In this document: one piece after another, positions 40,580-47,382 of the stretch
Layout of the letters: every line of letters starts with the position of its first letter
Position numbering within the stretch: the stretch's first letter is position 1
Assembly: GCA_977020255.1 (NCBI GenBank)
Contig: CDROCS010002432.1
Location: forward strand, 124,001 to 188,000
Source of the DNA: Obrimoposthia wandeli
Lineage: Eukaryota
DNA length: 64,000 nucleotides
Direction: 5' to 3'
The notes under the pieces: generated by a model
What the model saw: the letters and a program-made list of their open reading frames with translations, nothing else
Databases searched by the model: none
What the model was told of the DNA's origin: nothing
Translations under genes and position numbers: made by a program

Positions 40580-40865
40580 TAATTGAAGAGTTTGATCATG
40601 GCTCAGATTGAACGCTGGCGGCAGGCTTAACACATGCAAGTCGAGCGGTAACAGAGATAGCTTGCTATCTGCTGACGAGCGGCGGACGGGTGAGTAATGC
40701 TTGGGAATATGCCTTTGAGTGGGGGACAACAGTTGGAAACGACTGCTAATACCGCATAACGTCTACGGACCAAAGGGGGGGACGCTTCGGCACCTCTCGC
40801 TCATTGATTAGCCCAAGTGAGATTAGCTAGTTGGTAAGGTAATGGCTTACCAAGGCGATGATGCC

Positions 40866-40906
<41 letters not shown>

Positions 40907-40907
40907 T

Positions 40908-40938
<31 letters not shown>

Positions 40939-40939
40939 A

Positions 40940-40976
<37 letters not shown>

Positions 40977-41363
40977 TGCCGCGTGAGTGAAGACGGCCTT
41001 AGGGTTGTAAAAAAGCACTTTCAGCGAGGAGGAAAGGTTAGTAGTTAATAACTGCTAGCTGTGACGTTACTCGCAGAAGAAGCACTTTTCCGGCTAACTG
41101 TGCCAGCAGCCGCGGTAATACGAGGGGTGCAAGCGTTAATCGGAATACTGGGCGTAAGCGTGCGTAGGTGGTTTGTTAAGCAAGATGTAAAGCCCCTGGC
41201 TCAACCTGGGAACTGCATTTTGAACTGGCAAGCTAGAGTTTTGTAGAGGGTAAGTGGAATTCCTAGTGTAGAGGTGAAATTCGTAGATATTAGGAGGAAC
41301 ACCAGTGGCGAAGGCGACTTTCTGGACTGTAACTGACGCTGAGGCACGAAAGCGTGGGGAGCG

Positions 41364-41404
<41 letters not shown>

Positions 41405-41499
41405 TCAACTAGCCGTCTGTGGTCTTGAACCGTGGGTGGCGTAGCTAACGCGCTAAGTTGACCGCCTGGGGAGTACGGCCGCAAGGTTAAAACTCAAAT

Positions 41500-41549
<50 letters not shown>

Positions 41550-41626
41550 CAACGCGAAGAACCTTACCATCCCTTGACATCCAGAGAAGAGACTAGAGAT
41601 AGACTTGTGCCTTCGGGAACTCTGTG

Positions 41627-41658
<32 letters not shown>

Positions 41659-41664
41659 TGTGAA

Positions 41665-41699
<35 letters not shown>

Positions 41700-41740
41700 A
41701 TCCTTATTTGCCAGCGCGTAGTGGCGGGAACTCTAAGGAG

Positions 41741-41793
<53 letters not shown>

Positions 41794-41886
41794 CTTACGG
41801 GATGGGCTACACACGTGCTACAATGGCAAGTACAGAGGGCAGCAATACCGCGAGGTGGAGCGAATCCCACAAAGCTTGTCGTAGTC

Positions 41887-41937
<51 letters not shown>

Positions 41938-41948
41938 TAGATCAGAAT

Positions 41949-42005
<57 letters not shown>

Positions 42006-42064
42006 GGTTGCAAAAGAAGTGGCTAGTTTAACCCTTCGGGGAGGACGGTCACCACTTTGTGATT

Positions 42065-42095
<31 letters not shown>

Positions 42096-42128
42096 CCTAG
42101 GGGAACCTGGGGTTGGATCACCTCCTTA
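40580..42128 (+). rRNA. rrs: 16S rRNA (Colwellia-like variable regions; 5' half carries foreign-looking substitutions and indels)
   Basis: AGAGTTTGATCATGGCTCAG, GTGCCAGCAGCCGCGGTAA, GGATTAGATACCC, AAGTCGTAACAAGGT, GGATCACCTCCTTA. Confidence 0.98.
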
Positions 42129-42894: not shown

Positions 42895-43868
42895 GGTTAA
42901 GTGACTAAGCGTATACGGTGGATGCCTTGGCACTAAGAGCCGATGAAGGACGTGGTAAGCTGCGATAAGCTCAGGTGAGGTGATAAAACCGTTATAGCCT
43001 GAGATGTCCGAATGGGGGGAAACCCACCCGTCGTAAGGCAGTACGGTATCATTAAGTGAATACATAGCTTAATGAGGCGAACAGGAGAACTGAAACATCT
43101 AAGTACCCCCGAAGGAAAAGAAATCAACCGAGATTTCCTAAGTAGCGGCGAGCGAACGGGGATCAGCCCTTAAGTGGTTTGTAAGTTAGTGGAATCTACT
43201 GGAAAGTAGAACGATACAGGGTGATAGTCCCGTACACACGAAAATAAACTTATCATGAAATCGAGTAGGTCGGCACACGTGAAACGTTGACTGAACATGG
43301 GGGACCATCCTCCAAGGCTAAATACTCCTAACTGACCGATAGTGAACCAGTACCGTGAGGGAGAAAGGCGAAAAAAGAACCCCTGTGAGGGGAGTGAAAT
43401 AGAACCTGAAACCGCATACGTACAAGCAGTGAGAGCCGGATTTAGTCCAGTGATTGCGTCGCTTTTGTATAATGGGTCAGCGACTTATATTCTGTAGCAA
43501 GGTTAACCGAATAGGGGAGCCGTAGCGAAAGCGAGTGTTAACTGCGCGTTTAGTTGCAGGGTATAGACCCGAAACCCGGCGATCTACCCATGGGCAGGTT
43601 GAAGGTTGAGTAACATCAACTGGAGTGACCGAACACACGTATGTTGAAAAATGCGGTGATGACTTGTGGGTCGGAGTGAAGGCTAATCAAGCCGGGAGAT
43701 AGCTGGTTCTCCCTGAAATCTATTTAGGTAGAGCCTCGCACGGAACATTGGGGGTAGAGCACTGTTAAGGCTAGGGGGTCATCCCGACTTACCAACCCTT
43801 TGCAAACTCCGAATACCAATGAGTGATATGCGGGAGACACACTACGGGTGCTAACGTCCGTTGTGAAG

Positions 43869-43901
<33 letters not shown>

Positions 43902-44786
43902 AAAGTACTAGTTAAGTGGGAAACGATGTGGAAAGGCATAGACAGCTAGGAGGTTGGCTTAGAAGCAGCCATCCTTTAAAGAAAGCGTAATAGCTCACTA
44001 GTCGAGTCGGTCTGCGCGGAAGATGTAACGGGCTAAACTAGTCACCGAAGCTGTGGATTTGAACTTAGGTTCGCGGTGGGCAGCGTTCTGTAAGCCGTTG
44101 AAGGTGAGTTGTGCCAAAGCTTGCTGGAGGTATCAGAAGTGCGAATGCTGACATGAGTAACGATAAGGGGAGTGAAAACTCCCCCGCCGAAAGACTCAAG
44201 GTTTCTGTCCCATGTTAATCAGGGCAGAGGTAAAGTCGGCCCCTAAGGCGAGGCGGAAACGCGTAGTCGATGGAAACAGATTAATATTTCTGTACTTCTA
44301 TATATTGCGAAGGAGGGACGGAGTAGGCTGGGTGAGCACGGCGTTGAAATTAGTCCGTGTGAAGTAGGTAGGCGGTTGACTTAGGTAAATCCGGGTCTTC
44401 ATTCAACGCTGAGATACGAGACGAGACTCTACGGAGTTGAAGTCATTGATGCCATGCTTCCTGAAAAGCTTCTAAGCTTCAGATATATAGGAACCGTACC
44501 CCAAACCGACACAGGTGGTTAGATGTAGAGAATACTAAGGCGCTTGAGAGAACTCGGGTGAAGGAACTAGGCAAAATAGTACCGTAACTTCGGGAGAAGG
44601 TACGCTCTCTAGTGTAATGAAGCCCTTGCGTGCACAGGAGTCAAGTAACCAGGTGGCTGGAACTGTTTATTAAAAAACACAGCACTGTGCAAAATCGAAA
44701 GATGACGTATACGGTGTGACGCCTGCCCGGTGCCGGAAGGTTAATTGATTGGGTTAGTTTTCGGACGAAGCTCGCGATCGAAGCCC

Positions 44787-44830
<44 letters not shown>

Positions 44831-44833
44831 GCT

Positions 44834-44870
<37 letters not shown>

Positions 44871-45255
44871 CATGGCCACACTGTCTCCACCTCGAGACTC
44901 AGTGAAATTGAAATTGGTTAAGATGCCGTATACCCGCGGCTAGACGGAAAGACCCCCGTGAACCTTTACTATAGCTTGACAGTGAACATTGCTCCTACAT
45001 GTGTAGGATAGTGGGAGACTATGAAACCATGTCGCTAGATGGCCAATGGTGGAGTCTACCTGGAAATACCACCCTTGTATGCGTGATGTTCTAATCCTAG
45101 GGCCCCTAATCGGGCTTGGGGACACTGTCTGGTGGGTAGTTTGACAGGGCGGTCTCCTCCTAAAGAGTAACGGAGGAGCACGAAGGTTGGCTAAGTACGG
45201 TCGGACATCGTACGGTTAGCAATGGCATAAGCCAGCTTAACTGCGAGACAGACAC

Positions 45256-45342
<87 letters not shown>

Positions 45343-45383
45343 GAACAGGCTGATACCGCACAAGAGTTCATATCGACGGCGGT

Positions 45384-45426
<43 letters not shown>

Positions 45427-45428
45427 TC

Positions 45429-45461
<33 letters not shown>

Positions 45462-45794
45462 TGGTACGCGAGCTGGGTTTAGAACGTCGTGAGACAGTTC
45501 GGTCCCTATCTGCCGTGGGCGTTTGAGAATTGAAGAGGGCTGCTCCTAGTACGAGAGGACCGGAGTGGACGAACCGCTGGTGTTCGGGTTGTTATGCCAA
45601 TAGCATTGCCGGTAGCTACGTTCGGAACTGATAACAGAAAGCATCTAAGCGGGAAACAGGCTTTGAGATGAGTTCTCACTGGAGCTTTAAGCTCCTAAAG
45701 GGTCGTTGGAGACTACAACGTTGATAGGTTGAATTGACAGAAGTGCTGAGAGGCATTGAGCTAACCAATACTAATTACCGTGAGGCTTAACCAT
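42895..45794 (+). rRNA. rrl: 23S rRNA (numerous small indels relative to canonical sequence)
   Basis: GGTTAAGTGACTAAGCG...GGATGCCTTGG start; GAACTGAAACATCTAAGTA, CCTCGATGTCGGCTC, AGTACGAGAGGAC; ends GAGGCTTAACCAT; ~2.9 kb with no large intervening sequence. Confidence 0.97.
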
Positions 45795-45947
45795 ACAACA
45801 CCCAAAGTGGTTTTGTAGGTTTGACTAACATTCGAAAGAATGACACACGTACATAAATAGAATTGAATAAAATTCCGAACAAAAAACGTATTTATTATCA
45901 CTTGAGACAAAGTCTCACTGATACAGCTTTCAAGATTGACCCCTTTT

Positions 45948-46065
45948 TGTCTAGCGACAATAGCGACATGGCCCCACCTGATCCCATTCCGAACTCAGAA
46001 GTGAAACGTGTTAGCGCCGATGGTAGTGTGGGAGTTCCCATGTGAGAGTAGGACATTGCTAGGCT
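45948..46065 (+). rRNA. rrf: 5S rRNA
   Basis: TGTCTAGCGAC...CCGAACTCAGAAGTGAAAC...GATGGTAGTGTGGG...TTGCTAGGC; ends pair as helix I. Confidence 0.96.
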
Positions 46066-46077
46066 TCTATTTAGAAG

Positions 46078-46105
46078 AGCCCGTTACGAAAGTGACGGGC
46101 TTTTT
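46078..46105 (+). terminator. rrn terminator 1
   Basis: AGCCCGTTAC-GAAA-GTGACGGGCT followed by TTTT. Confidence 0.9.
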
Positions 46106-46173
46106 GCTATCTGAAATTTAAAACACATACAGCTACATGGCCCCACCTGATCCCATGCCGAACTCAGAAGTTA

Positions 46174-46223
46174 CCGCTCTTAGACATCCTGTCTTCGCGG
46201 AATTAGTGCATCCATGCACGTCA
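46174..46223 (+). repeat. Double-hairpin repeat, copy 1
   Basis: CCGCTCTTAGACATCCTGTCTTCGCGGAATTAGTGCATCCATGCACGTCA. Confidence 0.85.
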
Positions 46224-46278
46224 GCGTGTTAGCGCCGGTGGTAAAGAGCGTGTGGGTGTTCTTCTCTTTTATGTGAGA

Positions 46279-46329
46279 CCGTTCTTGCACATCCATGTTC
46301 CCACGGTATTAGTGCATCCATGCACGTCA
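46279..46329 (+). repeat. Double-hairpin repeat, copy 2
   Basis: CCGTTCTTGCACATCCATGTTCCCACGGTATTAGTGCATCCATGCACGTCA; last 22 nt identical to copy 1. Confidence 0.85.
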
Positions 46330-46350
46330 TTGCTAGGCTTCTATTTAGAG

Positions 46351-46379
46351 AAACCCGATTCGAAAGCGTCGGGTTTTTT
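46351..46379 (+). terminator. rrn terminator 2, duplicated with the pseudo-5S
   Basis: AAACCCGA-TTCGAAAGCG-TCGGGTTTTTT followed by GCTATCTG, as after terminator 1. Confidence 0.85.
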
Positions 46380-46403
46380 GCTATCTGGCGTTTGAGAAAT
46401 TAA

Positions 46404-46515
46404 AGCGATAAGTCATAAGCTATCAGTTTTGAGCGGTCAGCTATCAGTTTTAAAACATAACCCACTAACAGCTGATAGCTTTGATCTGATAACTTGAAAC
46501 TGGTCACTGATCGCT
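46404..46515. repeat. Short-period array: 4 x AGCTATCAG-like then 4 x its reverse complement
   Basis: AGCGATAAG 46404, AGCTATCAG 46418, AGCGGTCAG 46432, AGCTATCAG 46439; CTGATAGCT 46472, CTGATAACT 46486, CTGGTCACT 46500, CTGATCGCT 46507. Confidence 0.75.
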
Positions 46516-46638
46516 TTGAACTTAAAGCTTCAATTAACATAGAAAAAAAGTGGGCTGGGTATCGATGAGGGGTTGTTGAGTTTGTTATGAGAAAGAGCAT
46601 CGTTCGTAATGAACGACACTCATTGTACTTATGCTGCT

Positions 46639-47382
46639 TTATGTTTTATTTTTAAACCGACGTGATATAAGCCCCATTATCCCTAATGCAAAAATAGCGA
46701 GTGTAGATGGCTCAGGTACATTTACTTCTCTTGTAGTACCTTCAATGCCTATGGTGAAGCCATTCCAATACTCATCACTTAGGCTATTCCAACTGACTTG
46801 CTCAAAAGCGCCCTTAAACTGGATAGTGCCATGAGGTTCGCCGGTTCCAAGTAATTGATATTCAAACTCTCCATTACCAAGATCGACAACCTTCTTTCTA
46901 GATGTACCGTTGCCAAAATAGCCAGGGCTTTTACCATCAACTGACCCAACAGATAAAATGTCGAAATCTTGGTTAAAGGAATAGCCATTTTCGTTTAAGC
47001 TAACATAGGAGAATACAATATTAGCTACAGATTCAGAAAAGGACAACGTTTGAGTACCTTGGTTCTGCAAGGCTATCATTTCAGACGCTGTTGGAATGTT
47101 ATCAACTACTGAACTGGTATATGGAGAAAGAGCCGCACTTTGAGAGTTTTCAAAATAATCAGTTCCCGTACCTGTCTGTAGAAAGGCAATGCCTTGCTGA
47201 TTAGTATATGTAATATCAACACTTGAGGTATTAGTTGTAAATTCTCCCAACACTTCCGTTGATGTTCCTGACTGCCAATCGGCCCAGTAGATAACGCCAG
47301 CGTTAGCTGTGTTTATCATGCAACCTGCAGATAAAGTGATACCAATCAGTGCTGTATTTAAAAATTTTGATTTCATTTGCAT
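46639..47382 (-). CDS. PEP-CTERM (exosortase-sorted) surface protein
   Basis: Signal peptide ending ANA; C-terminal VPEPSTLAIFALGIMGLISRRFKNKT. Confidence 0.92.
   Translation of the reverse strand: MQMKSKFLNTALIGITLSAGCMINTANAGVIYWADWQSGTSTEVLGEFTTNTSSVDITYTNQQGIAFLQTGTGTDYFENSQSAALSPYTSSVVDNIPTASEMIALQNQGTQTLSFSESVANIVFSYVSLNENGYSFNQDFDILSVGSVDGKSPGYFGNGTSRKKVVDLGNGEFEYQLLGTGEPHGTIQFKGAFEQVSWNSLSDEYWNGFTIGIEGTTREVNVPEPSTLAIFALGIMGLISRRFKNKT

What the first reader, a model, noticed from the sequence alone, without database searches (positions are those of the whole stretch)
46126..46379. Broken second 5S rRNA copy carved into pieces by two copies of a ~50-bp double-hairpin repeat
Seen: right after the intact 5S and terminator, the 5S+terminator unit recurs. 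It lacks the 5' helix-I strand, and two related inserts replace short internal stretches (GAAA after CAGAAGT; GTAGGA after GTGAGA). Both inserts read CCG-TCTT..ACAT-CC-(A)TGT....CGG-ATTA-GTGCAT-CC-ATGCAC-GTCA, with two mini-hairpins and a CCG/CGG closing stem; the last 22 nt are identical. The 5S piece between them has drifted (GTAAAGAGCGTGTGGGTGTTCTTCTCTTTTATG). Inference: a small palindromic mobile repeat has inserted twice into an rRNA duplicate, or this is a 5S-derived ncRNA with expansion segments. Polishing errors would not easily create two coherent structured repeats.
Basis: partly seen in the sequence, partly recalled or inferred. Interest (0 to 1): 0.7.

Follow-up and report, generated by a model that had tools for sequence, protein, structure and literature searches.

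The report
Dead 5S gene invaded by mobile hairpins
A dead duplicate of the 5S ribosomal RNA gene in a Colwellia-like marine bacterium holds two copies of a 51-base double-hairpin mobile repeat, which proves to be widespread in marine Gammaproteobacteria and to gather at the tail ends of ribosomal RNA operons.

Summary
After the intact 5S gene and its terminator comes a second 5S-plus-terminator unit. It lacks the 5' strand of helix I and is interrupted by two related inserts of 50 and 51 nt.

It is not an assembly artefact. Contigs from three other public studies span the same junctions.

It is a pseudogene, not a 5S-derived RNA. It fails the Rfam 5S model and no promoter-like site was found. 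Homologous copies in at least five Colwellia/Cognaticolwellia genomes have each lost different parts.

The inserts belong to a large family, not a local oddity. Its 20-nt tail occurs in more than 120 loci of many gammaproteobacterial orders. Two of its helices covary strongly. Copy number runs from 0 to at least 37 per genome. Copies occur in tandem arrays and in frame inside ORFs. In Colwellia's family they cluster at rrn 3' ends, always in the rRNA sense.

Read on the opposite strand, the element is two AUGGAU-loop hairpins. That makes it a stand-alone relative of the TwoAYGGAY motif (RF01731), although that model does not detect it.

No transposase was identified, and Y1/RAYT genes do not co-occur with it. 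This scan had already noted a similar 48-nt element elsewhere in this assembly.

The parts
45950..46064 (+). Intact 5S rRNA gene ending the rrn operon (16S 40580-42128, 23S 42895-45794)
   Evidence: Rfam RF00001, 93 bits, full length
46075..46108 (+). Terminator hairpin and T run after the intact 5S
   Evidence: Inverted repeat I2, arms 46075-46087 and 46092-46104; sequence
46131..46171 (+). Pseudo-5S, 5' segment (helices II-III); 95% identical to the functional gene; the 5' strand of helix I is missing upstream
   Evidence: Repeat D2; partial RF00001 match at 46143-46173, 26.7 bits, below the threshold of 38
46174..46223 (+). Insert 1: 50-nt double-hairpin element, well preserved
   Evidence: Model R1, 71.0 bits; DNA fold -9.7 kcal/mol, z -3.5
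46224..46278 (+). Pseudo-5S central segment with a derived, expanded and broken helix IV, shared with relatives
   Evidence: Repeats D4 and D6; alignment A2 with L093, L036 and L096
46279..46329 (+). Insert 2: 51-nt double-hairpin element; its inner hairpin carries a mismatch
   Evidence: Model R1, 73.9 bits; fold; a copy sits at the same site in L093, L075 and L036
46330..46349 (+). Pseudo-5S 3' segment (3' strand of helix I plus trailer), identical to the functional copy
   Evidence: Repeat D1
46353..46379 (+). Second terminator hairpin and T run
   Evidence: Sequence; homologous to the terminator of the intact second 5S on contig C1760

Best explanation
The locus is the decaying second copy of a tandem 5S-5S arrangement at the end of an rrn operon in a Colwellia-like bacterium. 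It was colonised by a non-autonomous mobile element of about 51 nt. Shown: the element has an outer stem around an inner hairpin, a short linker, a second highly conserved hairpin and a GTCA end. Both hairpin loops read ATCCAT. It is mobile at the DNA level: its distribution is patchy, it forms head-to-tail arrays, and it inserts without target duplication. It enters ORFs, where 51-nt copies keep the frame open and 50-nt copies break it. In Colwellia's family it accumulates at rrn 3' ends in the rRNA-sense orientation. Inferred: the pseudogene carried elements at three sites (after GTGA of loop B, after GAGA, and after GGACA). Recombination between directly repeated copies then deleted or moved the 8-nt piece between them, which is why short 5S stretches look 'replaced'. 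Also inferred: the two ends of the pseudogene stay 95-100% identical to the live 5S through gene conversion, while the part shielded between the inserts drifts. Most speculative: the element moves as single-stranded DNA, the way IS200/IS605-type elements do, using an enzyme not yet identified.
For: Pseudogene status rests. An intact tandem 5S-5S on contig C1760 of the same organism shows the ancestral state. Homologous broken copies in L093, L036, L075, L096 and L088 share the derived helix IV piece and the element after GAGA, but differ in every other part. Helices 1 and 2 show 166 double-change cells against 45.7 in shuffles (0 of 500 shuffles reach this), and slid controls give at most 43. 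The right hairpin covaries in other subfamilies. The element is in 59 of 151 genomes of the family and 20 of 150 other sampled genomes of the class. A clean filled/empty pair shows a 51-nt insertion and no duplication. Five in-frame ORF copies were found, one of them inside an AAA_12 helicase domain. GTAGGACA lies between two copies in L036 and in a contig of X1. Every rrn-linked copy seen is in the sense orientation, at six or more distinct positions. Independent contigs span the locus.
Against: No transposase was found. Y1_Tnp does not co-occur, and one genome with at least 37 copies (G031) has none. Once rrn-linked copies are removed, the replication-strand bias is only 17 to 5. Local GC skew gives 58 to 38. 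The order of events at the three sites is a reconstruction. In L036 the GTAGGACA piece sits at the loop-B site, not at its native place. Expression of the locus could not be tested. Part of the rrn clustering reflects one insertion spreading between operons by gene conversion.
Confidence: 0.8

Rival explanations
1. The interrupted copy is a functional 5S-derived small RNA, and the inserts are expansion segments kept by selection.
For: The central 5S piece, the element after GAGA and a terminator are kept together in four lineages. Both window inserts still score near the family maximum.
Against: The 5' strand of helix I is absent, and the copy scores 26.7 bits against a threshold of 38. No promoter-like site was found, and a terminator stands directly upstream. 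The whole unit folds no better than shuffles, z -0.32. Relatives lose the 5' part, the 3' part, or insert 1 independently, and the new helix IV pairing shows uncompensated changes. One relative has an IS inside it (L088).
Confidence: 0.07
2. At rrn 3' ends the elements have been domesticated as RNA elements. They might act as processing or termination helpers in the pre-rRNA, or as Csr/Rsm-binding GGA hairpins when read from the opposite strand. The pseudogene copies would then be by-products.
For: All rrn-linked copies share one orientation at several independent positions. The second hairpin is highly conserved across orders. On the minus strand both hairpins present AUGGAU loops like those of TwoAYGGAY, which a preprint reports were proposed as Csr/Rsm binding sites.
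Against: At rrn the GGA strand is antisense to the rRNA. Away from rrn, orientation relative to neighbouring genes is near random: 44 same to 31 opposite for upstream genes, and 42 to 58 for downstream genes. Many genomes of the family have no copy. The conservation of the tail is partly an artefact of searching with it.
Confidence: 0.1
3. The structure is an assembly or polishing artefact of a long-read metagenome-like assembly.
For: The 21-nt tail occurs only twice in the 1.35-Gb assembly, both times here.
Against: Contigs from three other studies reproduce the junctions. Isolate genomes such as Colwellia sp. C1TZA3 carry homologous arrangements. No adapter-like sequence is present.
Confidence: 0.02

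Closest known systems
TwoAYGGAY RNA motif (Rfam RF01731; Weinberg et al. 2010, PMC2864571; extended and called mobile-element-like in preprint 10.64898/2026.09.22.753630)
   Same: Read on the minus strand, the element is two successive hairpins with AUGGAU loops, the second one longer and with internal loops. In Gilvimarinus, copies lie 0-34 nt from four of the RF01731 matches, on the strand opposite to the model orientation, so they read in the same direction as RF01731. Like TwoAYGGAY, copy number varies widely between genomes.
   Different: It has no basal stem enclosing both hairpins. RF01731 finds nothing in the window inserts at E up to 10, nor in 15 element-bearing loci at its gathering score. 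Three of five genomes tested have 4-27 element copies and no RF01731 match. It is only about 51 nt, stands alone, forms head-to-tail arrays, and sits in rRNA operons and ORFs.
Rickettsia palindromic elements (RPE), from my own knowledge and as cited in PMC3733652
   Same: Both are small palindromic repeats that insert in frame into protein-coding genes and into RNA genes, and are tolerated there.
   Different: There is no sequence relation. RPEs are about 100-150 bp and occur in Alphaproteobacteria. Here the RNA-gene target is a pseudogene or a spacer, not a working gene.
REP/REPIN elements moved by RAYT, and hairpin-ended miniature derivatives of IS200/IS605
   Same: Both have hairpins with covarying stems. 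Both lack target duplication and prefer 3' intergenic regions. A lean in replication-strand orientation resembles that of a true IS200-like element in genome G058.
   Different: It has no GTAG tag and does not fit the CGTC-tagged families. The two hairpins are direct, not inverted. Y1_Tnp genes show no co-occurrence.

Membership tests
5S rRNA (RF00001) | Score at or above the gathering threshold of 38 bits over the full model | tested here: not met
   Only 46143-46173 matches, at 26.7 bits. The neighbouring gene scores 93 bits.
5S rRNA (RF00001) | Helix I formed by the 5' and 3' ends | tested here: not met
   The 5' strand is absent upstream of 46131. Only the 3' strand, 46330-46339, remains.
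TwoAYGGAY (RF01731) | Two successive hairpins with AYGGAY terminal loops | tested here: met
   On the minus strand the conserved hairpin and the consensus inner hairpin read AUGGAU. Insert 1's inner hairpin has the shorter loop variant (A)GGA(U).
TwoAYGGAY (RF01731) | A common basal stem around both hairpins, and a score at or above 43 bits | tested here: not met
   No RF01731 match at E up to 10 in 46100-46400. None at gathering score in 15 loci holding the element.
REP elements moved by RAYT | A GTAG (or CGTC) tag beside the palindrome, and a cognate Y1 transposase in the genome | tested here: not met
   No GTAG tag. The stem and loop rules for CGTC families do not fit. PF01797 is in 35 of 59 element-positive genomes against 87 of 151 overall.
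IS200/IS605-type miniature element | Hairpins near both ends and insertion without target duplication | tested here: met
   Structure. The filled/empty pair at the 5S-terminator junction shows 51 nt added and no duplication.
IS200/IS605-type miniature element | Orientation tied to the replication fork | tested here: inconclusive
   38 to 5 over all loci, but 17 to 5 after removing rrn-linked loci, and 21 to 11 when two Cellvibrionaceae genomes are added. GC skew gives 58 to 38.
Csr/Rsm sponge RNA | A transcribed RNA with several GGA hairpin loops that binds CsrA | not testable with these tools
   Four GGA hairpins lie on the minus strand of 46174-46329. No promoter-like site was found, and the RNA runs hold only the conserved 5S part.

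The most novel reading that the evidence does not exclude
The 51-nt element is a distinct, self-contained mobile module: a stand-alone two-hairpin core of the TwoAYGGAY kind. It would be moved as single-stranded DNA by an enzyme not yet recognised, and it would preferentially enter the exposed sense strand at the heavily transcribed 3' ends of rRNA operons. From there it spreads between operons by gene conversion and between orders by horizontal transfer.
Probability: 0.3. Interest if true: 0.65.

Novelty: new variant of a known kind. Interest (0 to 1): 0.45.

Why it matters
The locus itself is an ordinary pseudogene. Its value is as a natural record of how a very small structured repeat behaves. 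It captures three insertion sites in one 120-nt gene, deletions and shuffling by recombination between copies, and conversion tracts that stop at the inserts. The element links a catalogued but unexplained RNA motif (TwoAYGGAY) to clear DNA-level mobility: empty and filled sites, tandem arrays, and in-frame ORF insertions. It also shows a marked preference for rRNA operon tails. That gives a concrete handle for finding the enzyme that moves these elements. It would also help decide whether their CsrA-like loops serve a protein that acts on DNA or on RNA. For annotators, it explains contig breaks and odd partial 5S matches downstream of rrn operons in marine Gammaproteobacteria.

Tried and rejected
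- **Sequencing adapters** as the source of the inserts: no resemblance (my own knowledge of the adapter sequences).
- **Known RNA families:** Rfam at the gathering threshold and at E up to 10 gave nothing for the inserts.
- **Literature search by sequence:** no paper holds the 14-mer.
- **GTAG/CGTC-tagged REP families:** read and rejected on stem, loop and tail rules.
- **Y1/RAYT transposase as the mover:** no co-occurrence.
- **Strong replication-strand bias:** the first count of 38 to 5 was largely driven by rrn-linked copies, which follow the direction of replication for their own reasons. I corrected it to 17 to 5.
- **Local GC skew** was too noisy to settle the question.
- **Whole-unit fold of the pseudogene:** no better than shuffles.
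- **Conservation of the 20-nt tail as evidence of selection:** not usable, because the relatives were found with that very 20-mer.
- **Expression:** the RNA runs found hold only the conserved 5S words, and the single read-laying run went to the DNA runs.

Full report
**What is there.** The window is a bacterial contig inside a 1.35-Gb, 6912-contig assembly. It carries an rrn operon: 16S, two tRNAs, 23S and a full 5S gene at 45950-46064, which scores 93 bits. A terminator hairpin follows. Then the 5S-plus-terminator unit recurs at 46131-46387. Its segments match the live gene at 95%, 95%, 92% and 87%. Two things are wrong with it. The 5' strand of helix I is missing, and two related inserts interrupt it at 46174-46223 and 46279-46329. 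Both inserts fold into the described double hairpin.

**Not an artefact.** The 21-nt tail of the inserts occurs only at these two places in the whole assembly, which at first looked suspicious. Contigs of other public runs settle the matter:
- A 286-nt contig from a plastic metagenome (X3) covers 46046-46331 with 8 differences and no gaps.
- A 172-nt contig from an estuary metagenome (X2) covers 46083-46254.
- Contigs of X4 cover both inserts.
- A 127-nt stretch of X1 is identical to the window. X1 may be the source sample, so I do not count it as independent.

**A pseudogene with a history.** Rfam recognises only 46143-46173 as 5S, at 26.7 bits against a threshold of 38. No promoter-like site lies in 45800-46700. 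The unit as a whole folds no better than shuffled sequence, z -0.32.

Another rrn end of the same organism, on contig C1760, has two intact 5S genes in tandem. Its second copy has compensated changes in helix I and a terminator like the one here. That is the likely ancestral state.

Homologous broken copies turned up in:
- Colwellia sp. C1TZA3 (L093)
- a Colwellia MAG (L036)
- a Cognaticolwellia MAG (L075)
- Colwellia sp. 1_MG-2023 (L096)
- a second Cognaticolwellia MAG (L088)

L093, L036 and L096 share with the window a derived, expanded and broken helix IV. L093, L036 and L075 share an element after GAGA. Everything else differs between lineages. The 5' segment is nearly intact only in the window. 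The 3' strand of helix I survives only in the window and L088. Insert 1 is present only in the window and L036. L088 has an IS inside the copy. The new AAAGAG/CTCTTT pairing carries uncompensated changes. This is decay, not conservation of a fold.

**Why 5S stretches look 'replaced'.** The empty homologue of the insert-1 site in L093 differs from the window's filled site by only one or two bases next to the insert. The 8 bases missing at insert 2 (GTAGGACA) are found between two element copies in L036 and in a contig of X1. I infer that elements once flanked that piece and that recombination between the direct copies removed it in the window's lineage.

In L075, L093 and L036 the stretch from the GAGA element to the terminator is gone. 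Recombination with an element between 5S and terminator would explain this, and such an element still exists in L093 and L096. The pseudogene's two ends are 95-100% identical to the live gene, while the middle has drifted. That fits gene conversion tracts stopped by the inserts. This last point is inference.

**The element family.** The hits span Colwellia, Thalassotalea, Pseudomonadales, Cellvibrionaceae, Bermanella, Thiotrichaceae and others.

Ninety-five non-redundant copies plus the two window inserts align to a consensus of about 51 nt. It has an outer stem, a TCCT internal loop, an inner hairpin, a CAT-T linker, a second hairpin and GTCA.
- The outer stem and inner hairpin covary strongly: 166 double-change cells against 45.7 in shuffles (0 of 500 shuffles reach this), with slid controls at 43 or fewer.
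- The second hairpin is invariant only because I searched with it. Other subfamilies change it in a compensated way.

A covariance model (R1) gives these counts:
- 2 strong copies in this assembly, plus a few variants on other contigs
- 4 to 27 copies in five named genomes
- 59 of 151 genomes in the family of Colwellia sp. C1TZA3, with 0 to at least 37 copies each
- 20 of 150 other sampled species of the class

**Signs of DNA-level mobility.**
- Head-to-tail arrays with a 50-51-nt period occur in L037, L072 and L119.
- One unambiguous filled/empty pair at the 5S-terminator junction shows 51 nt added and no target duplication.
- A junction of the form A^TTGC recurs in the 5S gene and at two sites in IS91-like transposase genes.
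- Most copies are intergenic, often between convergent genes.
- Eight lie inside ORFs. Five 51-nt copies keep the frame open: three in IS91-like transposase genes, one inside an AAA_12 helicase domain of a 1172-aa protein, and one in a 747-aa protein. Three 50-nt copies shift the frame.

**Stable-RNA bias.** In this family it clearly gathers at rrn 3' ends:
- All six copies in G040 lie about 25 nt upstream of 5S genes.
- Six of eleven copies in G058 are rrn-linked.
- Arrays of four or five copies follow 5S genes in G012 and G145.
- Other copies lie directly after 5S (L170, L173, L093, L096) or in the 23S-5S spacer (L113, L173).

Every rrn-linked copy is in the rRNA-sense orientation. Gene conversion between operons inflates the counts, but at least six distinct positions are involved. 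G003 has 15 copies and none near rrn, so the bias is specific to some lineages.

**Mechanism.** Using dnaA positions as origins, element orientation follows the replichore in 38 of 43 loci. Most of that comes from rrn-linked copies, which follow the direction of replication for their own reasons. Without them the count is 17 to 5, and 21 to 11 when two Cellvibrionaceae genomes are added. Local GC skew gives 58 to 38. This is suggestive only.

A true IS200-like element in G058 shows the expected orientation switch at the same inferred origin and terminus, which supports the replichore assignment. Y1_Tnp genes do not track the element: 35 of 59 against 87 of 151 overall, and one genome with at least 37 copies has none. 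Single-stranded-DNA transposition by an unidentified enzyme is my best guess, not a result.

**Relation to known things.** Read on the minus strand, the element is two hairpins with AUGGAU loops plus a CAGGAG stretch. This is the AYGGAY signature of TwoAYGGAY (RF01731). A 2026 preprint reports that these loops have been proposed as Csr/Rsm binding sites. It describes TwoAYGGAY as mobile-element-like, with variants that carry extra AYGGAY hairpins.

In Gilvimarinus, copies lie 0-34 nt from four of the RF01731 matches, reading in the same direction as RF01731. In G095 they lie near RF01731 matches as well. Even so, RF01731 does not detect the element. The element has no basal stem, and most genomes that carry it lack RF01731. 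I therefore class it as a stand-alone variant of that kind, not a member.

It behaves like Rickettsia palindromic elements in tolerating ORF insertion, but is unrelated in sequence. It does not fit the GTAG or CGTC REP families.

At rrn the GGA strand is antisense to the rRNA. Elsewhere orientation to genes is near random. I see no sign that the copies regulate their neighbours.

Two earlier notes of this scan agree with this reading: a 48-nt double hairpin with CsrA-like loops in Colwellia, and TwoAYGGAY-like repeats in Oleispira.

**Verdict.** The locus is a silent, decaying 5S pseudogene. The wider interest lies in the element family and its rrn preference.

Noticed in passing
window 46418-46530: Directly downstream of the second terminator is a patch of repeated AGCTATCAG / CTGATAGCT motifs, direct and inverted (family D5). 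A similar patch follows the rrn operon on contig C6174 (L025 1660-1760). Contigs of X1 and X4 join the first terminator straight to it. Its function is unknown.
   Followed up: no
L004 1490-1860 (own assembly, contig C1760): Two intact 5S genes in tandem. The second has a fully compensated variant of helix I and its own terminator, so functional 5S-5S tandems exist in the same organism.
   Followed up: partly
L031, L033, L034, L041 and about 30 more loci of one Pseudomonadales MAG (MT5bin.1): Here the 51-nt element is embedded in a longer repeat of roughly 150 nt that ends many contigs. It looks like a high-copy composite miniature element.
   Followed up: no
L059, L065, L069, L079, L120: Copies sit inside IS91-like transposase genes at two recurrent sites, both of the form A^TTGC. 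The IS could carry the element between genomes.
   Followed up: partly
G058 chromosome: At least 27 copies of an IS200-like Y1 transposase gene. Their strand switches at about 1.5 Mb and, between 2.6 and 4.1 Mb, around the dnaA gene at 3.8 Mb. This is a textbook replication-linked orientation pattern.
   Followed up: partly
L088 5300-5800 (reverse strand): In a Cognaticolwellia MAG the homologous pseudo-5S is cut by what looks like the end of an IS, with a transposase C-terminus reading into it. The element and the 3' strand of helix I remain.
   Followed up: no
L185 (G095 2560300-2564600): Three RF01731 matches and two copies of the 51-nt element are interleaved within 4.3 kb next to a leucine-leader-like match. 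This is a dense cluster of AYGGAY-type repeats.
   Followed up: no
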